A DNA stretch of 63,814 nucleotides, the filler included, from Octopus bimaculoides (Eukaryota): assembly GCF_001194135.2 (NCBI RefSeq). It is 10 parts of 8 records of this genome, joined end to end, with 100 filler letters (N's around TTAATTAATTAA, not from the genome) between each part and the next. Parts side by side here need not be neighbours in the genome. Positions count along the whole stretch, not along the records: positions 30,226 to 40,965 come from NC_069000.1; 9 more parts are not named here. The stretch is one strand, 5' to 3'. Position numbers and translations under genes: made by a program. The notes beneath the pieces were generated by a model that saw only the letters and a program-made list of their open reading frames with translations, was not told the origin of the DNA and searched no databases. Positions 29,751 to 41,218 of this stretch are shown piece by piece (the first letter of the stretch is position 1; every line of letters begins with the position of its first letter).

Positions 29751-30278
29751 AGATAATTACTTTAAACATGACATCTCTAATTGCTATTGTAACTATCGTT
29801 TAATTGCTCTTGGAACTCCTTATAAACATATTTTATATACAGGGAAAATTAATGACATTAATCGTCTAGTATGCAGATTTCTCTGCCGAACGTAAAGCTT
29901 ATCTATTTCCATTGTTTTGAATTAATCCTGGATTATCTCATAGCTTTGAGATTTTAACGATGTGATTTATTTTCTGGAATAACATTGTAGGTAGGCGTGA
30001 GAGGCTGGATGTGGCCAGATTAATCCTTTTTCGTTAAATATATAAAGCTTATCTATTTCCATTGTTTTGAATTAATCCTGGATTATCTCATAGCTTTGAG
30101 ATTTTAACGATGTGATTTATTTTCTNNNNNNNNNNNNNNNNNNNNNNNNNNNNNNNNNNNNNNNNNNNNTTAATTAATTAANNNNNNNNNNNNNNNNNNN
30201 NNNNNNNNNNNNNNNNNNNNNNNNNAGATGGACTAACCCATTACAATACACAAGAACTGAGTGAACTGTCAGCAATGG

Positions 30279-30665
30279 TGTTGTTGTTGGCACTCCGTCG
30301 CTTATGACGTCAAGGGTTCCAGTTGATCCGATCAACGGAACAGCCTGCTCGTGGAATTAACGTGCAAGTGGCTGAGCACTCCACAGACACTTGTGCCCTT
30401 AACGCAGTTCTCGGGGATATTCAGCGTGACACAATGTGACAAGGCTGACCCTTTGAATTACAGGTACAACAGAAACAGGAAGTAAGAGTGAGAGAAAGTT
30501 GTGGTGAAAGAGTACAGCAGGGTTCGCCACCATCCCCTGCCGGAGCCTTGTGGAGCTTTAGGTGTTTTCGCTCAATAAACACTCACAACGCCTGGTCTGG
30601 GAATCGAAACCGCGATCCTATGACCACGAGTCCGCTGCCCTAACCACTGGGCCATTGCGCCTCCA
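30279..30665 (-). mobile_element. family D tRNA-derived SINE, full length, (CAA)n tail, decayed TSD
   Basis: Head TGGAGGCGCAATGGCCCAGTGGTTAGG, B box GGTTTCGATTCCC; flanks TCAGCAATGGTGT (30269-81) and TGAGCAGTGGTGT (30666-78). Confidence 0.9.
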
Positions 30666-31239
30666 TGAGCAGTGGTGTAATTCACTGTGTTAGTTTGATG
30701 TGTGTTGGTTTAACGGTCAGTAGTTGAACAGTGAAATACTGAGTATCGTACCTACGTTTGAGAAGTATGGAGTATATTCTGTGTTAACATATATTTCTGT
30801 GATTTGTTATTTCTAGGTAACCACAACCAACTATTTATTTGTGTAATACCATTTTACACCAGACATGAATACCCACATCGTAACACTTTCCCAGGGTGAA
30901 GCTTGGTGGGTGGAAATCTATAAAATAATGTATCAGTCCAGTGTTTAGGATCAAGCAGAATTCTTAGAACTTTAGACACAGTGCCTTGTAGCATTGATTC
31001 CAGTTCGTTACTTTTCAAACTCCCAGACAGGTGTGGCAAACTTGTCTATGTCAAGTCGACAAGATGGTGTCTTGTAACAAAAATACCCAAAGGAAGGCAA
31101 CAGGGAACCGCCTTTTGTAGTTTCCCATGAAAATTTCTCATGGCAAGCACATTGCAGTTGTCAAATTCCCTACAATTCATGTGATCTGATGTCACAGGAA
31201 GGCAAACACAACCAATCCTGTCATCCTCTGCCCTGTCTC

Positions 31240-31435
31240 ATCACCATTATCATCATCATCATTATCAGCAGCAGCAGCATTTAATGTCTGTGTGTCATGC
31301 TGCAAAGGGCAGCAGAGTTTGACAGGATCCAATGGAGTCTCAAGGACCGTATCCTGCTCCAGTGTCTGTTTTGGCATGGTTTCTACACCTGGATGTCCTT
31401 CTTAACTCCAATCTCTTTTCAGTGTGTACAACACT
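31240..31435 (-). mobile_element. family E retroposon 3' part with (GAT)n tail
   Basis: (CAT)n-TTTAATGTC...GGTTTCTACACCTGGATGTCCTTC. Confidence 0.65.
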
Positions 31436-31529
31436 CAATAAACACACACATACACACACACACACACACTCACACATACACACAGACACACACACGCATG
31501 CACACACACATGCATGCATGCGCATAAGT

Positions 31530-31688
31530 GATGGCCATCTTTCAGTTTATGTTCATAAAATTCATTCATAAGGCTTTGTTCAGCCTGAGTTTATAGAAGA
31601 GACTTGCCCAAGGTGCTTCACACTGGGACGGACCCCAAGACCACATGGTTGGGAAGCAAACTGCCTAACCACACAGCCATGCCTGCAG
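31530..31688 (-). mobile_element. family C SINE 5' half
   Basis: ACTTGCCCAAGGTG...ACCACATGGTTGGGAAGCAA...ACCACACAGCCATGCCTG. Confidence 0.8.
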
Positions 31689-31815
31689 CTATAAGAACAT
31701 TCCCAATGAGGATGAGATTTTAAACTTACGCAGGGTAACCCCCACTAGATTAGAAGTCCATTGTCTCAACCCCTGAGCAAAACAATACAAAAAGACATTC
31801 CAACAAATCTATTAG

Positions 31816-32111
31816 CAGTTCTATATTTAAGAGATGAGGAATTATGTACATTATGTACATTATTTACATTATTTACAATTGACGAATATTTGTCCTCATC
31901 TTGTTTGTTGTTAACACAACGTTTCAGCTGATATACCCTCCAGCCTTCATCAGGTGTCTTGGGGAAATTTCAAACCTGGGTTCTCATTCCTAAGGTATTT
32001 TTCGATGTTGTTATTATTATTATTATGATTATTATTATTATTATTATTCAGGTCACTGCCTGGAATCGAACTCGGAATCCTGGGCTTAGTAGCCCACACT
32101 CTGAGCCACTA
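31816..32111 (-). mobile_element. tRNA-headed, hammerhead-containing SINE-like element (copy 1)
   Basis: Minus strand: TAGTGG..AGAGTGTGGGCTACTAA...GAGTTCGATTCC (tRNA-like), (AAT)n, unique body with hammerhead, (AATAATGTA)-type repeats, end ..TTAAATATAGAACTG. Confidence 0.85.
31913..31958 (-). ncRNA. minimal type I hammerhead ribozyme (core intact)
   Basis: GACAC-CUGAUGA-A-GGCUG(GAGGGUAUAU)CAGCU-GAAAC-GUU-GUGUU: stem I GACAC/GUGUU, stem II 5 bp, palindromic stem III AACGUU. Confidence 0.8.
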
Positions 32112-32112
32112 T

Positions 32113-32211
32113 GTGGGCTACTAACCCCAAGATTCTGAGTTCAATTCCAGGTAGTGATCTGAATAATAATAATAAATCTTGGGGTTAGTAGCCCGCACTC
32201 TTAACCACTAT
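32113..32211. repeat. two extra inverted head fragments of the same element
   Basis: + fragment GTGGGCTACTAACCCCAAG...GAATAATAATAATAA (32113-32175), then a - fragment ATCTTGGGGTTAGTAGCCCGCACTCTTAACCACTA (32176-32211). Confidence 0.9.
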
Positions 32212-32212
32212 G

Positions 32213-32460
32213 TAGTGGTTAAGAGTGTGGGTTACTAACCCCAAGATTCCGAGTTCGATTCCAGGCAGTGACCTGAATAATAATAATAATAATAATAATG
32301 ATAATAATAATAACAACATCGAAAAATACCTTAGGAATGAGAACCCAGGTTCGAAATTTCCCCAAGACACCTGATGAAGGCTGGAGGGTATATCAGCCAA
32401 AATGTTGTGTTAACAACAAACATGATGAGGACAAATATCCATCAAATGAAAATAATGTAA
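32213..32460 (+). mobile_element. tRNA-headed, hammerhead-containing SINE-like element (copy 2)
   Basis: TAGTGGTTAAGAGTGTGGGTTACTAACCCC..GAGTTCGATTCCAGG, (AAT)n, AACATCGAAAAATACCTTAGG..., hammerhead region. Confidence 0.85.
32366..32411 (+). ncRNA. hammerhead ribozyme copy, core mutated (GAAAC to AAAAT)
   Basis: GACAC-CUGAUGA-A-GGCUG..CAGCC-AAAAU-GUU-GUGUU. Confidence 0.65.
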
Positions 32461-32819
32461 ATAAATGTATTAGCACTACTATAATGGTCTCCATGCACCC
32501 ACTGTGTATCTAAGACCTTCTCAGCTTCCTTCTTTATGCTCTCATCTCTGCTATGTCTCATCTTTCAGATCCTACACAAAACACTTCTTACCAATCCTTA
32601 CTTCTCAGCCGAGCAAACCCTCTGGAATTTGTCTTCCTGCCCACATTTTTATGTTTTTGTTTTGTTTTTTTCTTTTTTCTCCAATATCAGGCTTTACCAA
32701 TCTGGTTGGATGTGGGGTAAGAGGGGTGGGTGGATGAGTATTCCAGACCTCACAGACACTTCCCACCTGCCTAACACATTCTCTGACTAACACATTCTCT
32801 CAGCATTATTCTTAGTTTA

Positions 32820-33294
32820 TTTCTTGTATGTTGTTGTTGTGGTTGTTGTGGCAGTTGTTTATAGTCATCAGAAATTTTAGCAACAGCAGCATCTTATGCA
32901 AAATCATTGTTGCTATTATTTTTAGCATCACCAAGGCCACCACGACCACGACCACTGTAGTCATTGTTATCATCAACATGACTACCACCAACACCACCAC
33001 CAACAACAAGAACACCATCACCACCACCACATCACCACCATCATTATCATCACTGTTTTCATCACCAATATGACTGTCATAGTCATCGTCATTATGACCA
33101 CCACCACCACCACCACCACCACCACGATCATCATTAGTGTTATGGCTACCATCTCCACCACAGCCATCACCTCCACCACCACGACCACCATTACCATCAT
33201 CATCATCATTATCATTTGTGTCAGATTAATAATAGTTTGTCCATGCTCAAATGAATTGAATGGTTACTCTTACTGGCAAACTTTATTATTATCA

Positions 33295-33339
<45 letters not shown>

Positions 33340-33378
33340 GTTTGACTTTTGTTTTGCATTTTTATTATTATTATTATC

Positions 33379-33439
<61 letters not shown>

Positions 33440-33440
33440 N
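32820..33440. repeat. compound trinucleotide microsatellites (CAC/CAT/CAA/TAT)n
   Basis: Read directly. Confidence 0.95.
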
Positions 33441-34026
33441 NNNNNNNNNNNNNNNNNNNNNNNNNNNNNNNNNNNNNNNNNNNNNNNNNNNNNNNNNNNN
33501 NNNNNNNNNNNNNNNNNNNNNNNNNNNNNNNNNNNNNNNNNNNNNNNNNNNNNNNNNNNNNNNNNNNNNNNNNNNNNNNNNNNNNNNNNNNNNNNNNNNN
33601 NNNNNNNNNNNNNNNNNNNNNNNNNNNNNNNNNNNNNNNNNNNNNNNNNNNNNNNNNNNNNNNNNNNNNNNNNNNNNNNNNNNNNNNNNNNNNNNNNNNN
33701 NNNNNNNNNNNNNNNNNNNNNNNNNNNNNNNNNNNNNNNNNNNNNNNNNNNNNNNNNNNNNNNNNNNNNNNNNNNNNNNNNNNNNNNNNNNNNNNNNNNN
33801 NNNNNNNNNNNNNNNNNNNNNNNNNNNNNNNNNNNNNNNNNNNNNNNNNNNNNNNNNNNGTTCAAATATAATCAAAAATTTGGAGGGGTTTCCATAAAAA
33901 TTCATTAACTGGTTTCAGTCACTGGGTTGTGGCCATGCTGGGGCATCAATATCATTGATTGTATTAACCCTAAGGCCTGGTTATTTATTTCCTCAACTGT
34001 TATATATATAGTGAGCTTGGAATATG

Positions 34027-34790
34027 GGGGGGCACATGGATTAGTGGTTAGGGTGTTGGATTCATGATTGTGAGATGGTGGTTTTGATTCTTGGACTGGG
34101 TGATGTATTGTGTTCTTGGGCAAAACTCTCCATTTCATGTTGCTCCAGTCCACTCACATGGCAAAAATGAGCAGTCCTATGGTGGACTGGCGTCCCATCC
34201 AGGTGGGGAATATATGAGTCACAGAAACCAGGAAATCAGCATTATGAGTCTATATGACTCAGAAAGAATCTTTATCCTTTTTGTGGAGGCACATGGTCTA
34301 GTCGTTAGGGTGTGCGACTCATGATCATAAGATTGTGGTTTCGATTCCTGGACCAAGCGATATGTTGTATTCTTGAGCAAAACACTTCATTTCATATTGC
34401 TACAGGATACTCAGCCAGCAAAAGTGAGTAATCCTGTGAAGGGCCAGCAGCCCATCCAGGTGGGGAATATTTGCACCACAGACACCAGAAAACCAGCTTT
34501 ATTAGTCTACATGACTCAGAAAGGATCTTTATCGTTTTTGTGGAGGCACATGGCTTAGTGGTTAGGGTGTTGAACTCATGATCATGAGATTGTGGTTTCA
34601 ATTCCTGGACTGGACGATGTATTGTGTTCTTGAGCAAAACACTTCATTTCACACTGCTACAGGACACTTAGTTGGCAAAAATGAGTAATCCTGTGATGGA
34701 CCGATGTCACATCCAGGTGGGAAAATATATGTGCCATAGGAACTGGGAAACGGGCCCTTATGGGTCAGTATGACTCACGAAAGAAGGAAT
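34027..34790 (+). mobile_element. three head-to-tail family B SINEs (period ~257 bp)
   Basis: Heads G(G/A)GGCACATGG..TAGT at ~34027, ~34285 and ~34542; junction ATCTTTATC(C/G)TTTTTGTGGAGGCACATGG twice. Confidence 0.9.
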
Positions 34791-34835
34791 TTGAATAATA
34801 AAAGGCAAAGTGAAACTGGGTGGAGTTTGCACGAG

Positions 34836-35150
34836 GTGTAGGTATGGCTGTGTTCACGTTGCAGCCATGTGGTTTCAGGTTCAGTCCCACTATGCAGCAT
34901 CTTAGGCAAATGTCTTCTACTATAGCCCCAGACTGACCAATGCCTTATGAGTGAATTCAGTAGATGGAAACTGTGTAGAAGCCCGAGCCCGTCATATACA
35001 TGTGTATGCTTGCGCTCGCATGCCCACGTGTGTGTGTGTGTGTGTGTGTGTGCATCTTTGTAATTGTCCCACCACTACCACCACCACCACTTGTGAACTG
35101 GTGTTGGTTTGTTTACATCCTTGTTAGCAGTTTGTACAAGGAGACTAATC
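34836..35150 (+). mobile_element. family C SINE, diverged
   Basis: GTATGGCTGTG...GGTTCAGTCCCACT...TCTTCTACTATAGCC...(GT)n...GGTGTTGGTTTGTTTACATCC. Confidence 0.8.
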
Positions 35151-35409
35151 CCTCTGGTCCAGGAATTGTAACTTCATTCTTGTGATGCACCTCCTTCACA
35201 GAGGGAGAACATAAAGCGGCAGGAACCCTCTTGACTTACAAGGTACAGGGTAAGCCCTCTAGTGCTAGTACAATGATAGAATGTTCTAGTACATTCTCTA
35301 AAGTGGTTGTCAGATGAACCAAGACATCCTAAGTTCAAGAGGATCTGTTAGTCTTCTCTTGTTGAGGACACAACAGCATTTCTAGGGTTAGTGTCATGAG
35401 GAAATGAAT

Positions 35410-35685
35410 CTAATCATCATCATCATCATCATCATTGTAATCATCATCATTACCATTGTTGCTGTCATTGTCATCATTTAACAGCCACTTTTCCATGCTT
35501 GCAAGGGTCAGATGGAATTTGTTGAGGCAGATTTTTCAACAGCCTGATGCCCTTTCTGTTTCCAACCGAGGTAATATTTCCCCATGGCCAGACATGTTTG
35601 CAATGGAAGACTAGAATTGAACAACCTCAATTGTATGATGGTGATGCTCTTTTACAACCATCATCTGAAGTCTGGACAAGGCTAC
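35410..35685 (-). mobile_element. family E retroposon
   Basis: (CAT)n...TTCCATGCTTGC...GATGCCCTTTCTGTTTCCAACC...GGCCAGACATGTT. Confidence 0.65.
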
Positions 35686-35717
35686 ACACACACACACACA
35701 CACACACACGTATGTGT

Positions 35718-35749
<32 letters not shown>

Positions 35750-35751
35750 GC

Positions 35752-35786
<35 letters not shown>

Positions 35787-35991
35787 TATTATTTGATAAT
35801 AAATCATATGATATGCACCTGCTAGCTTACTAGTAAAGCATGTTCATTTTCACAGTGTTCATTGGGTATTTGATTAATGAGAGAAACAGAAAATGGGTCA
35901 AAGCAATTATAATGATCAATAAACATTCTCATATCTTCCATCTCTCTCATTAATCAAATATATATATATAAATACACATACATACAACTTT

Positions 35992-36156
35992 GACAGGCTT
36001 CTTTCAGTTTCTATGAACCAAATCCACTAACAAGGTTTCCGTTGGCCTGGGGCTATAATAGAAGACACTTTCCCAAGGTGCCATTCAACAGGACTGAACC
36101 CAAGACCCTATAGTTGGGAAGGAAGCTTCTTAAACCACAGAGTTACACCTGTGCCT
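35992..36156 (-). mobile_element. family C SINE 5' half
   Basis: GGCTTCTTTCAGTTTC...GCTATAATAGAAGACACTTTCCCAAGGTGCC...GGACTGAACCC. Confidence 0.8.
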
Positions 36157-36454
36157 GTAATTTGTAAAGTATTTAATGTTAGGAAGAGCATATGGATGTA
36201 GAAACCTTGCCGAAAAATAAGTGCACAAGTGAAACATGGTCCCACCACCACCACTGCCAACCACCCCTGCAAGGGCAATAACTCTGACTGAGACCTGACT
36301 CCAGACAGCAAGGAGAATGGACATGAAACTGTGATGTACTCCAAGACACCTCTTAAAAGACAGAATGGTCATAGGCTAGAATGTCTTTGGCCATAGGTCT
36401 ACTTAGTCAGGTTTAATCTCAAACTAAACAGCAACAACAAGAACAGGTGCAGGT

Positions 36455-36660
36455 GTGACCTGACTCAAACGTCTGACCCACTCGTACACTTCTGTGTAGC
36501 TCATACACTCCTCTCCAAACACTTTCCACAACTTTGCGCAAGCCTCTGAGCAGGTATTGCCATGACAACTTTCTCTGTCATGGTCAATATGGCTATCACA
36601 CGCTACACACTTTCCTTCCAAGCACTGCTGTAAACAGCAGAAGTGAGCTAGAACATTAAG
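36455..36660 (-). pseudogene. mariner transposase N-terminal (HTH) fragment
   Basis: KLWKVFGEECMSYTEVYEWVRR resembles the mariner paired-like HTH region. Confidence 0.55.
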
Positions 36661-36794
36661 ACTTAGTGCACATGCACAGCAGAGTTCAAGATCAACCTTT
36701 GCTAAGCAGCTTCACTCTGCATGCTTTAGCTTCGTTACTATGGCAGCAATCCGGATACTTATTGATCAGACCACGTAGTATATATACATACATA

Positions 36795-36945
36795 CATCAT
36801 CATCATCATTTAATGTCTGCTTTCCATGCTAGCATGGGTTGGACGATTTGACTGAGGACTGGTGAACCAGATGGCTATACCACACTCCAATCTGATCTGG
36901 CAGAGTTTCTACAGCTGGATGCCCTTCCTAATGCCAACCATTCTG
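36795..36945 (-). mobile_element. family E retroposon 3' part
   Basis: (CAT)n TTTAATGTCTGCTTTCCATGCTAGCATGGGTTGGACG...CTGGATGCCCTTCCTAATGCCAACC. Confidence 0.8.
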
Positions 36946-37816
36946 NNNNNNNNNNNNNNNNNNNNNNNNNNNNNNNNNNNNNNNNNNNNNNNNNNNNNNN
37001 NNNNNNNNNNNNNNNNNNNNNNNNNNNNNNNNNNNNNNNNNNNNNNNNNNNNNNNNNNNNNNNNNNNNNNNNNNNNNNNNNNNNNNNNNNNNNNNNNNNN
37101 NNNNNNNNNNNNNNNNNNNNNNNNNNNNNNNNNNNNNNNNNNNNNNNNNNNNNNNNNNNNNNNNNNNNNNNNNNNNNNNNNNNNNNNNNNNNNNNNNNNN
37201 NNNNNNNNNNNNNNNNNNNNNNNNNNNNNNNNNNNNNNNNNNNNNNNNNNNNNNNNNNNNNNNNNNNNNNNNNNNNNNNNNNNNNNNNNNNNNNNNNNNN
37301 NNNNNNNNNNNNNNNNNNNNNNNNNNNNNNNNNNNNNNNNNNNNNNNNNNNNNNNNNNNNNNNNNNNNNNNNNNNNNNNNNNNNNNNNNNNNNNNNNNNN
37401 NNNNNNNNNNNNNNNNNNNNNNNNNNNNNNNNNNNNNNNNNNNNNNNNNNNNNNNNNNNNNNNNNNNNNNNNNNNNNNNNNNNNNNNNNNNNNNNNNNNN
37501 NNNNNNNNNNNNNNNNNNNNNNNNNNNNNNNNNNNNNNNNNNNNNNNNNNNNNNNNNNNNNNNNNNNNNNNNNNNNNNNNNNNNNNNNNNNNNNNNNNNN
37601 NNNNNNNNNNNNNNNNNNNNNNNNNNNNNNNNNNNNNNNNNNNNNNNNNNNNNNNNNNNNNNNNNNNNNNNNNNNNNNNNNNNNNNNNNNNNNNNNTTAA
37701 ATAAACATTCCTCCATACAATGCTCTTAATTCAGAGAACGTTCATTTGTTGAGATTTTATTACTACCTCCTACTAAGAAAGCTATTTTCCCTTCTCATAT
37801 ATATATTTGCACTATA

Positions 37817-37853
<37 letters not shown>

Positions 37854-38094
37854 TTATATTTGTATATATGTATGTATAGTGTTGTTGTTTTTTTTTTGGC
37901 TCATTTTTGGTTTTGGTTCCAAATGTTTCTTAGATACAAAGGTGTTTTGTTGACGAACTCATGGAGCCATGCATTCATTCCGATATCGTCGAGTTCACCG
38001 GTTACATAACTCCATGCGAAATCTGGTGCCATAAATTAACATAATTACACCCGTGTTTTTTTTTTTCCTCAAGGCACCTTGGTACATCATCATC

Positions 38095-38575
38095 ACTACC
38101 ATCATCATTATCATCATCATCATCATTATTTTAATGTCCACTTCCCCATGTTTGCATGGGTTAGACTCACAGAATCTATTGAGGTTGACTTTTGACAGGT
38201 GGATACCCTTCCTGTTGCCAACACTCATTTCTAAGCAAGGTGATTAATATTTCGCGTGACCAGACATGTTCATGCATTATGTTGGAAATGAATGATACTA
38301 CTTTGTATGACTGTGACTCTCATTTACACCTATCGTGTGATGCTAAGGCTAGGAGACAGAAACATTCACACACACACACACACACCTGGTGATGGTGCCA
38401 TGTAAAAAGAGCACCCAGTACACTCTGTAAGTTGGTTGGTGTTAGGAAGAGTATCCAGCCATAGAAACCAAGCCAGAACAGACAAGGCAGCTTGGTTTGA
38501 CCCTCTGGCCTTACTAGTTCCTGTCAAACCCTCCAGCCTATGACAGCACAGAAAACGGACATATCTAGACCAAAT
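38095..38575. mobile_element. two family E copies back to back (- 38095-38370; + 38390-38575)
   Basis: GGATACCCTTCCTGTTGCCAAC on one and GGTTGGTGTTAGGAAGAGTATCCAGCC on the other. Confidence 0.65.
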
Positions 38576-38721
38576 ATTCTATCTGCTTTATGTTCAAATT
38601 GGTCAGATCTGTCTTCTCACACTTACCCTGCAATGTCATTCTAAAAGTAAACAATCAACTCTGTAAAATCTTGAAGCTACAAACTAACATGCGATTAATT
38701 TTTTAAAATGTGATTGAATGG

Positions 38722-39118
38722 GTAGAGGCATGGCTGTGTAGTAAGAAGTTTGCTTCCCAACCACATGGTTCCAGGTTCAGTCCTACTGTGTGGCACCTTG
38801 GACAAGTGTCTTCTACTATAGCCTTGGGCCAACCAAAACCTTGTAAGTGGATTTAGTTGCTGGCAACTAAAAGAAGCCAGCCATATATACATATGTGTGT
38901 CTTTGTCTCTATGTTTGTCCACCACTTGGTAACTGGTGTTGGTGTATTTACATCCCTGTAACTTAGCAGTTTAGCAAAAGAGACCAATAGAATAAGTACC
39001 AGGCTTACAAAGAGAAAATGTACTGGTTGATTCATTCAACTAAAATTCCTCAAGTGGTGCCCCAACATGGCCACATACAGTCTAATGATTGAAACAAGTA
39101 AAAGGAAAAAGATAAAGT
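38722..39118 (+). mobile_element. family C SINE, full length
   Basis: Head GGCATGGCTGTGTAGTAAG, CORE-like CACCTTGGACAAGTGTCTTCTACTATAGCC, tail ..AATGATTGAAACAAGTAAAAG. Confidence 0.9.
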
Positions 39119-40311
39119 TGGAAGAGTATTAGACCAATGATTTAAAGATCCCAGGTTCAATCCCGAGTTTCGGCATCCAGTGGCTGGTTTGCCTTCTTTT
39201 CAACATGGTGCCCCAGCATGGCCTCAGTCTAATGATTGAAACAAATAAAAGGAAAAAGATAAAGTTGGAAGAGTGTTAGACCAATGATTTAAAGATCCCA
39301 GGTTCNNNNNNNNNNNNNNNNNNNNNNNNNNNNNNNNNNNNNNNNNNNNNNNNNNNNNNNNNNNNNNNNNNNNNNNNNNNNNNNNNNNNNNNNNNNNNNN
39401 NNNNNNNNNNNNNNNNNNNNNNNNNNNNNNNNNNNNNNNNNNNNNNNNNNNNNNNNNNNNNNNNNNNNNNNNNNNNNNNNNNNNNNNNNNNNNNNNNNNN
39501 NNNNNNNNNNNNNNNNNNNNNNNNNNNNNNNNNNNNNNNNNNNNNNNNNNNNNNNNNNNNNNNNNNNNNNNNNNNNNNNNNNNNNNNNNNNNNNNNNNNN
39601 NNNNNNNNNNNNNNNNNNNNNNNNNNNNNNNNNNNNNNNNNNNNNNNNNNNNNNNNNNNNNNNNNNNNNNNNNNNNNNNNNNNNNNNNNNNNNNNNNNNN
39701 NNNNNNNNNNNNNNNNNNNNNNNNNNNNNNNNNNNNNNNNNNNNNNNNNNNNNNNNNNNNNNNNNNNNNNNNNNNNNNNNNNNNNNNNNNNNNNNNNNNN
39801 NNNNNNNNNNNNNNNNNNNNNNNNNNNNNNNNNNNNNNNNNNNNNNNNNNNNNNNNNNNNNNNNNNNNNNNNNNNNNNNNNNNNNNNNNNNNNNNNNNNN
39901 NNNNNNNNNNNNNNNNNNNNNNNNNNNNNNNNNNNNNNNNNNNNNNNNNNNNNNNNNNNNNNNNNNNNNNNNNNNNNNNNNNNNNNNNNNNNNNNNNNNN
40001 NNNNNNNNNNNNNNNNNNNNNNNNNNNNNNNNNNNNNNNNNNNNNNNNNNNNNNNNNNNNNNNNNNNNNNNNNNNNNNNNNNNNNNNNNNNNNNNNNNNN
40101 NNNNNNNNNNNNNNNNNNNNNNNNAAAGTATGGTAGCTTGATGTAGTGACTCAGTGATTTCTAATTTATGGATTTCTTAACGTTAACGTGCATGTGAAAG
40201 TTTATGCTAGACACACATTCACTTACACACACACACACACACATACACACACACAGAAAATACATGCATAAATCTATATGTATGTATGTGTGAGTACATA
40301 TCTATTTAGTC

Positions 40312-40347
<36 letters not shown>

Positions 40348-40395
40348 GTATGTATATATATTCATACATACATGCATTTGTATATCTTAGATATG

Positions 40396-40633
40396 CAGTA
40401 ATCCCTCAACTATCACAAGTGTTACATTCCAAAACCCCTTGCGATAGGTGAAAATCTGCAAAGTAGAAACAGTACTGTACTGTATATTGTTTGAAAATTA
40501 TTTTTATAATTTGAATATATTTACTTTATTACAAATGCAAAACAACACAATGGAGGAATTGACGTAAGCTTAAATAATAAACTGCAATAGGTGAACCATG
40601 ATAGGTGAACCACAATATGGTGAGGGATTACTG
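40396..40633. mobile_element. pogo/Tigger-like MITE
   Basis: TIRs CAGTAATCCCTC / GAGGGATTACTG; TA on the right, TG (decayed TA) on the left. Confidence 0.75.
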
Positions 40634-40704
40634 TATATATATCTATATATATGTATATATATATGCACACACATATATATATACAAACATGCATGTATCT
40701 AAAT

Positions 40705-40884
40705 ATCATCATCATCGTCATCGTTTAACGTCCGCTTTCCAAGCTGGCATGGGTTGGACGGTTTGACTGAGGGCTGGCAACTCAGAAGGCTGCACCAGGC
40801 TCCAATCTGATCTGGCAAAGTTTCTACAAATGCCAGATCAGATTGGAACCTGGTTCAGCCTTCTGGCTTGCCAGCCCTCAGTCA

Positions 40885-40886
<2 letters not shown>
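40705..40886. mobile_element. family E fragment with a fold-back duplication (56 bp arms)
   Basis: 40762-40817 is the near-perfect reverse complement of 40831-40886, with a 13 nt loop. Confidence 0.9.
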
Positions 40887-40924
<38 letters not shown>

Positions 40925-41218
40925 TATACATACATACATGTATATATGTTTGTGTGTGTGTATATNNNNNNNNNNNNNNNNNNNNNNNNNNNNNNNNNNN
41001 NNNNNNNNNTTAATTAATTAANNNNNNNNNNNNNNNNNNNNNNNNNNNNNNNNNNNNNNNNNNNNGGCCAACCTGGTCCCTGTAATTATTGATTTTTTTT
41101 CTCCTCCGCGTACATTGTGAGATGAGTTGCTGCATTTTTGCATTGGATATCAATTATGTAAAAGCATGATTTGTGCTATCGTTCCAAGTGATTGTGAGCG
41201 ATCCATGTTACGCTATGC

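What the first reader, a model, noticed from the sequence alone, without database searches (positions are those of the whole stretch)
31816..32460. tRNA-headed SINE carrying a Penelope-type hammerhead ribozyme: candidate PLE-mobilised 'ribozyme SINE'
Seen: both copies have a tRNA-like head (AGTGGTTAAG, anticodon-arm-like GGGCTACTAACCC, B box GAGTTCGATTCC), an (AAT)n linker and a body with GACAC-CUGAUGA-A-[5 bp stem II]-GAAAC-GUU-GUGUU. Stem I pairs (GACAC/GUGUU) and stem III is the loopless palindrome AACGUU. The minus copy keeps the core; the plus copy has GAAAC changed to AAAAT. Established: minimal type I hammerheads with palindromic stem III that act as dimers are typical of Penelope-like pLTRs and retrozymes, whereas tRNA SINEs normally borrow a LINE 3' tail. 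Inference: a Pol III-transcribed non-autonomous element that self-cleaves and uses Penelope RT/GIY-YIG machinery. I do not know of such a SINE class being described, but could not search the literature.
Basis: partly seen in the sequence, partly recalled or inferred. Interest (0 to 1): 0.9.

Follow-up and report, generated by a model that had tools for sequence, protein, structure and literature searches.

The report
Inverted retroelement pair with minimal hammerhead
Two head-to-head copies of a short non-coding mobile element, each joining a tRNA-like promoter piece to a Penelope-type minimal hammerhead ribozyme, look like one old Penelope-style insertion; whether this is a real SINE family could not be tested, and related ribozyme-bearing SINE-like elements are already known from blood flukes.

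Summary
Window 31860-32111 (-) and 32213-32464 (+) are 252-nt inverted arms, 94% identical without gaps. Each arm has a 5'-truncated tRNA-like stretch (AGTGG plus GAGTTCGATTCC at tRNA spacing), an (AAT)n run, a body with a type I minimal hammerhead, and a 9-bp-repeat tail.

The minus copy keeps the full catalytic core. It also has the traits published for Penelope-like-element (PLE) hammerheads: an unpaired base after A9, a 6-bp helix II, a 5-bp helix I and an ACGU palindrome in place of helix III. All three core differences between the copies are CpG decay, so the inserted sequence read CAGCCGAAACGUU with G10.1-C11.1.

The locus matches the published PLE insertion pattern: head-to-head 5'-truncated copies, a one-sided 33-nt tail extension and a 25-bp flanking direct repeat (20/25).

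Not shown:
- No other copy exists in the 10.7-kb piece, and no tool reached the source genome, so the head-body link across a family is untested.
- The A box is incomplete.
- Rfam finds neither a tRNA nor a hammerhead.
- Cleavage is untested.

The class is not unprecedented: schistosome Sm-alpha/Sj-alpha elements, dispersed and oppositely oriented PLE min-hammerheads, and non-autonomous PLEs are all described. Verdict: partly supported, a new variant of a known kind, moderate interest.

The parts
31802..31826 (.). Left copy of the direct repeat that flanks the whole composite (candidate target-site duplication), AACAAATCTATTAGCAGTTCTATAT
   Evidence: the best 18-nt window matches 15/18 with 32460-32477, reached by 2 of 2000 shuffles. 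By eye it extends to 20/25.
31827..31859 (-). One-sided 33-nt 3' extension ('tail') of the minus copy, absent from the plus copy; it contains UCCUCAUCU, complementary to AGAUGAGGA at 31892-31900
   Evidence: Arm homology stops at 31860 while the flanking repeat ends at 31826. The 79-nt 3' end folds with z = -3.4, matched by 1 of 200 shuffles. A 30-40-bp or 31-bp one-sided tail is described for PLE insertions.
31860..32111 (-). Minus copy of the element: tail repeats (ATTATGTAC)n 31841-31877, body, (ATT)n linker 32008-32048, tRNA-like stretch 32049-32111 with B box GAGTTCGATTCC at 32062-32073
   Evidence: (I1)
31913..31958 (-). Type I minimal hammerhead with intact catalytic core: helix I GACAC/GUGUU, CUGAUGA, unpaired A, helix II GGCUGG/UCAGCU (G10.1-U11.1 wobble), GAAA, ACGU palindrome, U17. 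The predicted cut lies between 31918 and 31917.
   Evidence: Descriptor hit. The strict version gave 0 hits in 80 Mb of simulated strand. The MFE fold recovers helices I and II. Rfam hammerhead models give no hit.
32112..32175 (+). Inner fragment: tRNA-like stretch from its position 16 through the B box into (AAT)5
   Evidence: D1, 92% to 32226-32289; I2, 91% to 32035-32098
32175..32211 (-). Inner fragment: first about 36 nt of the truncated tRNA-like stretch, forming a near-perfect hairpin with the start of the plus copy
   Evidence: I5, 36-nt arms, 94%, 2 nt apart; D2
32213..32464 (+). Plus copy of the element: tRNA-like stretch 32213-32275 (B box 32251-32262), (AAT)n 32276-32316, body, short tail
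32346..32362 (+). Second B-box-like motif inside the body (CCAGGTTCGAAATTTCC), just upstream of the hammerhead; TTTG in the minus copy through CpG decay
   Evidence: the only exact GGTTCGA in the piece. It suggests the body also descends from a tRNA-related unit (inference).
32366..32411 (+). Dead hammerhead remnant: same helices, C11.1 retained, G12->A and C15.2->U
   Evidence: differences at arm positions 186, 187 and 191, all in CpG context
32460..32484 (.). Right copy of the flanking direct repeat, AATAAATGTATTAGCACTACTATAA; its first 5 nt overlap the tail of the plus copy

Best explanation
The 31827-32459 block is the product of one old retrotransposition event of Penelope (PLE) type. It deposited two head-to-head, 5'-truncated copies of a short non-coding element, plus two small inverted head fragments at the junction.

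The element is a composite. Its 5' side is tRNA-derived sequence with Pol III-type A and B box remnants. Then come an (AAT)n run, a body with a second T-arm-like motif, and a 3' module carrying a PLE-type minimal type I hammerhead about 50-90 nt from the 3' end.

Proposed working, with the status of each step:
1. A master copy with a complete tRNA-like head is transcribed, probably by Pol III (inferred).
2. The 3' module, hammerhead included, mimics a PLE 3' end or pLTR and is used in trans by a PLE reverse transcriptase/GIY-YIG endonuclease (inferred from the hammerhead type and the insertion scars).
3. Target-primed reverse transcription with self-priming or template jumps gives the 5' truncation, the head-to-head inversion with hairpin junctions, the one-sided 33-nt snap-back tail and the roughly 25-bp target duplication (the scars are shown; the enzyme is inferred).
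4. The hammerhead has no helix III of its own. It can only cut as a dimer through its ACGU palindrome, after GUU (inferred from published PLE hammerheads).

At insertion the core was intact (CAGCCGAAACGUU). CpG decay has since weakened one copy and killed the other. Both copies lack the first part of the A box, so they are dead relics.

My probabilities for the sub-claims: genuine PLE-type hammerhead about 0.85; PLE-type integration about 0.65; an amplifying tRNA-headed SINE family about 0.4.
For: Hammerhead:
- There is a single descriptor hit in the piece. The strict form gave 0 hits in 80 Mb of simulated strand.
- Features that my loose descriptor did not require still match the published PLE min-hammerhead consensus (PMC4209133). 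These are the unpaired A after A9, the 6-bp helix II, the 5-bp helix I, the C15.2-G16.2 palindrome, and G10.1-C11.1 in the plus copy and the inferred ancestor.
- The three core differences between the arms are all CpG transitions, in a piece with CpG o/e 0.29.

Integration scars:
- The arms are gapless and 94% identical, and their homology stops at the element's tails rather than in arbitrary flank.
- The junctions are hairpins with 13-nt and 2-nt loops (I2 and I5).
- All four head copies are about equally far from their consensus, as expected from one event.
- A flanking direct repeat is reached by 2 of 2000 shuffles.
- The one-sided 33-nt extension folds back on the element (z = -3.4).
- Published PLE insertions show this same set of features: an inverted 5'-truncated copy at the 5' end, palindromes at the junction ascribed to self-priming, a 31-bp or 30-40-bp tail on one side, and a TSD. 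pLTRs alone suffice for mobilisation in trans (PMC3846280; PMC8557442).
- PMC4209133 reports dual min-hammerheads 100-700 bp apart on opposite strands.

Head: AGTGG plus GTTCRANNCC at tRNA spacing occurs in both arms, against 0 in 100 shuffles.
Against: - Only this one locus is available. There is no third copy in the piece and no access to the source genome. The head-body link, the family consensus and any partner PLE are therefore untested.
- No RT or endonuclease ORF is visible in the piece (ORF list; not profile-searched).
- Rfam gives no tRNA or hammerhead hit even at E<=10 on 691 nt.
- ARAGORN finds no tRNA by default. Its relaxed call on the plus head is within noise, at 4.15 hits per shuffle.
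- The A box is incomplete, so the true 5' end is unknown.
- The absence of T4 runs is not significant (P about 0.36-0.52).
- The hammerhead monomer fold is not more stable than shuffles (z = -0.46).
- The 9-bp tandem-repeat tail looks, from general knowledge, more like the tails of some LINE-dependent SINEs.
- Another unrelated repeat in the same piece also carries a fold-back (40762-40886). Inverted junctions may therefore be common in this genome and less diagnostic.
- The flanking repeat is only 80% identical.
Confidence: 0.5

Rival explanations
1. One-off chimera or nested juxtaposition, not a SINE family. A simple tRNA-derived SINE that ends in an (AAT)n tail became joined to a 5'-truncated PLE 3' end or pLTR fragment. 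The join arose either by template switching during the same reverse-transcription event or by a PLE insertion into the microsatellite tail. Alternatively, the arms are just the last 250 nt of a longer PLE-related element in which the tRNA-like piece is internal.
For: - The inner plus fragment (32112-32175) is exactly a 'head plus (AAT)5' unit that stops in the microsatellite, as a separate SINE primed on its tail would.
- PLEs show a microsatellite insertion bias and template jumps at trinucleotide repeats.
- Most dispersed min-hammerheads are interpreted as truncated PLEs.
- The head's 5' end is a fold-back point, not a natural terminus.
- No second locus is available.
Against: - Head, linker and body were copied together in both arms. 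The arms end at the element's tails, and a direct repeat flanks the whole block. At the time of integration they therefore behaved as one template.
- A nested insertion into a pre-existing microsatellite would put the bodies inside and the heads outside, or would need two matching insertions.
- No stand-alone 'head plus (AAT)n' copy exists in the piece.
Confidence: 0.3
2. An ordinary LINE-dependent tRNA-SINE. Its body carries a hammerhead-like string by chance or from an unrelated source. The palindrome arose after insertion by a replication fold-back or template switch, or by LINE twin priming.
For: - The tail is made of 9-bp tandem units (ATAATGTAM)n, a style known from some LINE-dependent SINEs (general knowledge).
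- Loose min-hammerhead matches are expected by chance at roughly tens per multi-gigabase genome (one hit in 80 Mb of strand).
- Rfam gives no hammerhead hit.
- Another repeat in the piece also has a fold-back.
Against: - The strict motif gave 0 hits in 80 Mb of simulated strand.
- It carries several PLE-specific traits that my loose descriptor did not require.
- The arm boundaries coincide with the element ends, and a direct repeat flanks the whole palindrome, which a random segmental fold-back would not give.
- Twin priming does not duplicate the same segment in both orientations (general knowledge).
Confidence: 0.15
3. Assembly artefact: a palindromic mis-join in a gapped draft assembly.
For: The piece has three N gaps, and PLE-type inverted structures are known to trouble assemblies.
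Against: The arms differ by 16 substitutions and no indels, with a transition and CpG bias typical of real divergence. The inner fragments carry their own substitutions.
Confidence: 0.03

Closest known systems
Minimal type I hammerheads of Penelope-like elements (Cervera & de la Pena 2014, PMC4209133; Lunse et al. 2017, not readable here)
   Same: CUGAUGA and GAAA boxes; an unpaired nucleotide between A9 and 10.1; long helix II; helix I of 4-5 bp; no helix III loop and a palindromic 15.2-16.2, so action only as a dimer; occurrence as pairs a few hundred bp apart on opposite strands.
   Different: Here the motif lies downstream of a tRNA-like stretch and an (AAT)n run, not in a recognisable pLTR next to an RT/EN ORF. 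The 10.1-11.1 pair is G-U in the one copy whose core is intact.
Sm-alpha / Sj-alpha SINE-like retroposons of Schistosoma (Ferbeyre et al. 1998; Laha et al. 2000, as summarised in PMC6765202 and PMC8490949)
   Same: Short non-coding retroposon with a Pol III-type promoter region followed by a type I hammerhead; cleavage in cis or trans of multimeric RNA is proposed to process the transcript.
   Different: Sm-alpha carries a canonical, efficient hammerhead and occurs largely in tandem arrays. Here the hammerhead is the minimal PLE type, the copies are inverted rather than tandem, and the host is a different, unidentified organism. The repeats look cephalopod-like from memory only. I could not read the primary papers.
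Penelope-like element insertion architecture (Arkhipova et al. 2013, PMC3846280; Craig et al. 2021, PMC8557442)
   Same: 5' truncation; an inverted copy abutting the 5' end head-to-head; a palindromic junction; an optional tail of about 31-40 bp on one side; a target duplication; mobilisation in trans of foreign sequence carrying only pLTR sequence.
   Different: There is no direct partial tandem (pLTR) and no ORF. The candidate target duplication is about 25 bp, against 8-10 bp in the rotifer examples.
Animal non-LTR retrozymes (Cervera & de la Pena 2020, PMC7229834; Li et al. 2026 preprint)
   Same: Short non-autonomous elements with type I hammerheads, thought to depend on PLE machinery.
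   Different: Retrozymes are head-to-tail tandem repeats of 170-400 bp with canonical hammerheads, expressed as circular RNAs, and have no tRNA-like promoter part. This locus is an inverted pair with a minimal hammerhead.
Classical tRNA-derived SINEs (SINE2) with a LINE-derived 3' tail
   Same: Modular head-body-tail plan, size near 250-300 nt, A/B box remnants, target duplication, tail of short tandem units.
   Different: The 3' module carries a PLE-type ribozyme, and the insertion scars are not those of ordinary LINE-mediated integration. I found no SINE-PLE partnership in the searchable literature.

Membership tests
Hammerhead ribozyme, type I | Conserved core C3-U4-G5-A6-N7-G8-A9 ... G12-A13-A14 ... 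A15.1-U16.1, H17, with helices I and II flanking in type I order | tested here: met
   Minus copy 31913-31958: all core positions are present and U17 is the cleavage-site base. The plus copy fails (G12->A).
Hammerhead ribozyme, type I | Match to the curated covariance models (Rfam hammerhead families) | tested here: not met
   No hammerhead hit at E<=1 on the piece or at E<=10 on 691 nt. This is expected for a motif without its own helix III, so it argues against a canonical hammerhead, not against the minimal type.
Hammerhead ribozyme, type I | Self-cleavage | not testable with these tools
   Needs in vitro transcription of monomer, tandem dimer and trans mixtures.
PLE minimal hammerhead (min-HHR) | Unpaired nucleotide between A9 and 10.1 | tested here: met
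   A at 31946 (minus) and 32378 (plus); criterion.
PLE minimal hammerhead (min-HHR) | G10.1-C11.1 closing pair | tested here: inconclusive
   G-C in the dead plus copy and G-U in the core-intact minus copy. The ancestor is inferred to be G-C by CpG logic.
PLE minimal hammerhead (min-HHR) | Long helix II, short helix I (4-5 bp), and no helix III loop with palindromic 15.2-16.2 | tested here: met
   Helix II is 6 bp, helix I is 5 bp, and ACGU is the palindrome. The published range for helix II is 6-8 bp.
PLE minimal hammerhead (min-HHR) | Location in the pLTR or 3' end of an RT/GIY-YIG element, or homology to one | not testable with these tools
   No PLE ORF is apparent in the piece, and the source genome was unreachable.
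PLE minimal hammerhead (min-HHR) | Covariation in helices I and II across a family | not testable with these tools
   There are only two copies, from one event, and both helices are identical in them.
tRNA-derived SINE (SINE2) | Internal Pol III promoter: A box and B box at tRNA spacing | tested here: inconclusive
   The B box matches 10 of 11 positions, and the A-box core AGTGG lies 37 nt upstream in both arms, against 0 in 100 shuffles. The first half of the A box and the acceptor stem are missing.
tRNA-derived SINE (SINE2) | Recognisable tRNA-like cloverleaf | tested here: not met
   ARAGORN default finds 0 and Rfam finds no tRNA hit. The relaxed ARAGORN call of tRNA-Ser(act) at 32204-32273 is within the noise of 4.15 hits per shuffle.
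tRNA-derived SINE (SINE2) | Dispersed multi-copy family with a constant head-body junction and independent target duplications | not testable with these tools
   No further copy in the piece, and no reachable source-genome data.
PLE-type insertion | 5'-truncated copy with an adjacent inverted 5'-truncated copy (head-to-head) and a palindromic junction | tested here: met
   (I1, I2, I5); criterion.
PLE-type insertion | Optional extension of about 30-40 bp on one side only | tested here: met
   33 nt at 31827-31859, on the minus copy only.
PLE-type insertion | Target-site duplication flanking the whole composite | tested here: met
   31802-31826 against 32460-32484, 20/25; reached by 2 of 2000 shuffles. 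It is imperfect and longer than the published 8-10-bp examples.
PLE-type insertion | Direct partial tandem forming a pLTR | tested here: not met
   No direct repeat of the body.
Non-LTR retrozyme | Head-to-tail tandem repeats of 170-400 bp, each with a type I hammerhead | tested here: not met
   The two hammerheads lie on opposite strands, and there is no tandem array.

The most novel reading that the evidence does not exclude
This locus is a relic of a real, amplified family of Pol III-driven tRNA-derived SINEs. That family took over the hammerhead-bearing 3' end of a Penelope-like element and is copied by the PLE reverse transcriptase/GIY-YIG nuclease instead of a LINE. It would be a SINE-PLE partnership with a dimer-dependent ribozyme in the recognition module, outside the flatworms.
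Probability: 0.35. Interest if true: 0.7.

Novelty: new variant of a known kind. Interest (0 to 1): 0.45.

Why it matters
SINEs are defined by their dependence on LINE machinery. Penelope-like elements are abundant in many invertebrates, yet their replication cycle and their parasites remain poorly understood.

A tRNA-promoted SINE that borrows a PLE 3' end would show which part of a PLE RNA the enzyme recognises. It would give a small, tractable substrate for studying PLE integration: self-priming, the tail extension and inverted copies. It would also link the thousands of orphan minimal hammerheads in animal genomes to a defined class of mobile element.

As it stands, the locus is one well-preserved example that fits this picture. 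It is not proof of a family.

Tried and rejected
1. Rfam covariance scans of the whole piece (E<=1) and of 31800-32490 (E<=10) gave only hairpin-driven miRNA-like sub-threshold hits, with no tRNA and no hammerhead.
2. ARAGORN at default settings found nothing. At an 80% threshold it calls the plus head tRNA-Ser(act), but shuffles give 4.15 calls each, so I discarded it.
3. I tried to recover other copies through spurious ORFs in the large protein collection.
   - The SINE antisense ORF gave 6 word-sharing candidates and none significant.
   - Ten window ORFs were absent by exact look-up.
   - The ORF of the most abundant repeat in the piece gave 1 candidate and none significant.
   - Conclusion: the collection does not cover this organism's repeats.
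4. Exact-pattern scans of viral, metagenome and prokaryote genome collections, using the hammerhead body, a CpG-restored gapped hammerhead pattern and an abundant-repeat 24-mer, all gave 0 hits.
5. A full-text search for sequence strings from the element found nothing relevant.
6. Literature searches for a described SINE-PLE partnership found none beyond the schistosome elements and untyped 'short non-autonomous Penelope' elements. Ferbeyre 1998 and Lunse 2017 are not held.
7. Pol III terminator avoidance: there is no T4 run in the sense strand, but shuffles give this 36-52% of the time, so I dropped it as evidence.
8. Thermodynamic support for the hammerhead monomer is lacking (z = -0.46, not informative). 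Cofold of dimers favours other intermolecular pairings, so it is not used as evidence.
The ORF list shows no long clean ORF.
10. The 257-bp tandem tRNA-like repeat at 34025-34795 was inspected for a CUGANGA/GAAA core and has none (the descriptor found no hit there).
Full report
**What is there.** Only the piece 30226-40965 is real sequence. It has 40% G+C, CpG o/e 0.29 and three N gaps.

The finding sits on a large imperfect palindrome. The arms are 31860-32111 and 32213-32464: 252 nt, 94% complementary without gaps, 101 nt apart. Read in the element's sense, each arm has five parts:
- a tRNA-like stretch starting at (A)TAGTGG and containing GAGTTCGATTCC;
- an (AAT)n run of about 13 units;
- a body that contains a second T-arm-like motif, CCAGGTTCGAAATTTCC;
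- the string GACAC-CUGAUGA-A-GGCUGG-AGGGUAUA-UCAGCY-RAAAY-GUU-GUGUU;
- a tail of 9-bp units.

The 101 nt between the arms are two further pieces of the tRNA-like stretch in alternating orientation, 32112-32175 (+) and 32175-32211 (-). They give hairpin junctions with 13-nt and 2-nt loops (I2, I5, D1, D2). No other copy of either part exists in the piece.

**Is the hammerhead real?** I wrote a descriptor for the minimal type I hammerhead: CUGANGA, an optional extra base, helix II, GAAA, a palindromic insert, U16.1, H17 and helix I. It hits the piece once, on the minus strand at 31913-31958, with the cut predicted after U17 at 31918.

In 80 Mb of composition-matched random strand, the loose descriptor hit once. 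A strict one (helix II >=6 bp, helix I >=5 bp) never hit. A loose match is therefore expected tens of times in a multi-gigabase genome. A match of this quality in a 10.7-kb piece is not a chance event.

The motif also carries traits that Cervera and de la Pena list as emergent properties of Penelope-like-element (PLE) hammerheads. These are an unpaired nucleotide between A9 and 10.1, a long helix II, a helix I of 4-5 bp and a palindromic 15.2-16.2 pair with no loop, so that the ribozyme can only form as a dimer (PMC4209133). The same paper notes pairs of such motifs 100-700 bp apart on opposite strands, which is what this locus shows.

The two arms differ at 16 positions, 10 of them transitions. 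The three differences inside the ribozyme core all fall in CpG context. The sequence at insertion was therefore CAGCCGAAACGUU, with the canonical G10.1-C11.1 pair and an intact G12. Today the minus copy has a G-U wobble at 10.1-11.1, and the plus copy is dead (G12->A).

Rfam's hammerhead models do not see the motif, as expected for a motif lacking its own helix III. The monomer fold recovers helices I and II but is no more stable than shuffles. Cleavage is untested, and published min-hammerheads cleave poorly in vitro even as dimers.

**Is the head tRNA-like?** Partly. The A-box core AGTGG and a B box GTTCRANNCC at tRNA spacing occur in both arms, against none in 100 shuffles.

The stretch begins inside the A box, and the acceptor stem is missing. 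ARAGORN and Rfam do not call a tRNA. A relaxed ARAGORN call lies within noise. The start of the stretch is the fold-back point of the palindrome, not a natural 5' end. The copies here therefore cannot show that the tRNA-like part heads the element, and they could not be transcribed from their own promoter. The lack of T4 runs in the sense strand is not significant.

**How the locus arose.** Several observations point to one integration event rather than a later segmental fold-back:
- Arm homology stops at the element's tails.
- The four copies of the tRNA-like stretch are about equally far from their consensus.
- A direct repeat of about 25 bp flanks the whole block, at 31802-31826 and 32460-32484. 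It matches at 20 of 25 positions, and its best 18-nt window is reached by 2 of 2000 shuffles.
- Only the minus copy carries an extra 33 nt beyond the shared tail (31827-31859). This extension contains UCCUCAUCU, complementary to AGAUGAGGA just downstream of the hammerhead, and the 79-nt end folds with z = -3.4.

This set is the published signature of PLE integration. It comprises 5' truncation, an inverted 5'-truncated copy abutting head-to-head, junction palindromes ascribed to self-priming, a one-sided tail of 31 or 30-40 bp, and a target duplication. It has been documented that pLTR sequence alone lets unrelated DNA be mobilised in trans (PMC3846280; PMC8557442).

Two cautions apply. The tail of 9-bp repeats is, from general knowledge, more typical of some LINE-dependent SINEs. 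A different repeat in the same piece also ends in a fold-back next to a (TA)n run (40762-40886), so inverted junctions may be common in this genome.

**What could not be done.** The decisive test is whether the head and the body travel together across the genome, whether the consensus keeps the core, and whether a PLE shares the 3' module. That test needs the source genome.

I tried to reach it in four ways. These were spurious ORFs in the large protein collection, exact look-ups, pattern scans of the public DNA collections and sequence strings in the literature. All came back empty.

From memory, the other repeats in the piece resemble octopus SINEs. A 24-mer that I recalled from that family matches three copies in the piece with 1-2 mismatches. 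That is not a tool-based identification of the organism.

**Comparison with what is known.** SINE-like, Pol III-transcribed retroposons with a hammerhead are known from schistosomes (Sm-alpha, Sj-alpha), so the class as such is not new. Those elements carry canonical hammerheads and sit mostly in tandem.

Also described are dispersed PLE min-hammerheads, non-autonomous PLEs and animal retrozymes as PLE dependants. I found no description of a tRNA-derived SINE that uses a PLE 3' end. Curated repeat libraries could not be searched.

My best reading is a relic of one PLE-type retrotransposition of a composite non-autonomous element with a tRNA-derived 5' part and a PLE-type hammerhead 3' module (confidence about 0.5). 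The main rival is a one-off chimera or a fragment of a longer PLE-related element (about 0.3). A LINE-dependent SINE with a coincidental motif comes next (about 0.15). An assembly artefact is unlikely (about 0.03).

I rate it a new variant of a known kind, with interest 0.45. It would rise to about 0.7 if a genome census shows a true SINE family partnered with a PLE.

Noticed in passing
window 34025-34795 (also 30566-30655, inverted): A different tRNA-like repeat of 257 bp stands in three head-to-tail tandem copies (78% and 67% identical to the first). Tandem SINE-like units are unusual for LINE-driven insertion and are reminiscent of PLE or retrozyme-style multicopy insertions. It has no CUGANGA/GAAA hammerhead core.
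   Followed up: partly
window 40720-40886 and 36781-36945: Another repeat family starts with an (ATC)n run. At 40762-40817 / 40831-40886 it ends in a 56-nt fold-back (93%, 13-nt loop) directly beside a (TA)n microsatellite. The relative at 36781-36945 has no fold-back before an N gap. The hairpin explains the sub-threshold plant miRNA-like Rfam hits there (MIR6459, 56 bits against a gathering score of 100).
   Followed up: partly
window 31594-31667 (-), 34827-34972 (+), 35962-36140 (-), 38734-39160 (+): There are four copies of an abundant tRNA-like SINE in 10.7 kb. A 24-mer that I recalled from octopus repeats matches three of them with 1-2 mismatches, which hints at a cephalopod origin but is not verified by any tool.
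   Followed up: partly
window 39078-39158 and 39225-39305: An 81-nt direct duplication, 98% identical and 147 bp apart, sits at the 3' part of the abundant repeat and runs into an assembly gap (39306-40124). It could be a partial tandem or an assembly effect.
   Followed up: no
window 30226-40965: The piece is strongly CpG-depleted (o/e 0.29 at 40% G+C) and very rich in microsatellites: (AC)n, (TTA)52 at 33283-33439, (ATC)n, (TATG)n and (TA)n. Two of the three N gaps abut microsatellites or repeats.
   Followed up: partly
window 32346-32362 (+) and 31962-31978 (-): A second B-box-like motif (CCAGGTTCGAAATTTCC) lies inside the body, just upstream of the hammerhead. The element may be a dimer of two tRNA-related units joined by the former (AAT)n tail of the first, as in dimeric SINEs.
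   Followed up: partly
window 31827-32459: If transcribed across, the block would form a roughly 250-bp near-perfect RNA hairpin, a plausible source of small silencing RNAs. Rfam reports only miRNA-like sub-threshold hits on the central hairpins (32177-32248).
   Followed up: no
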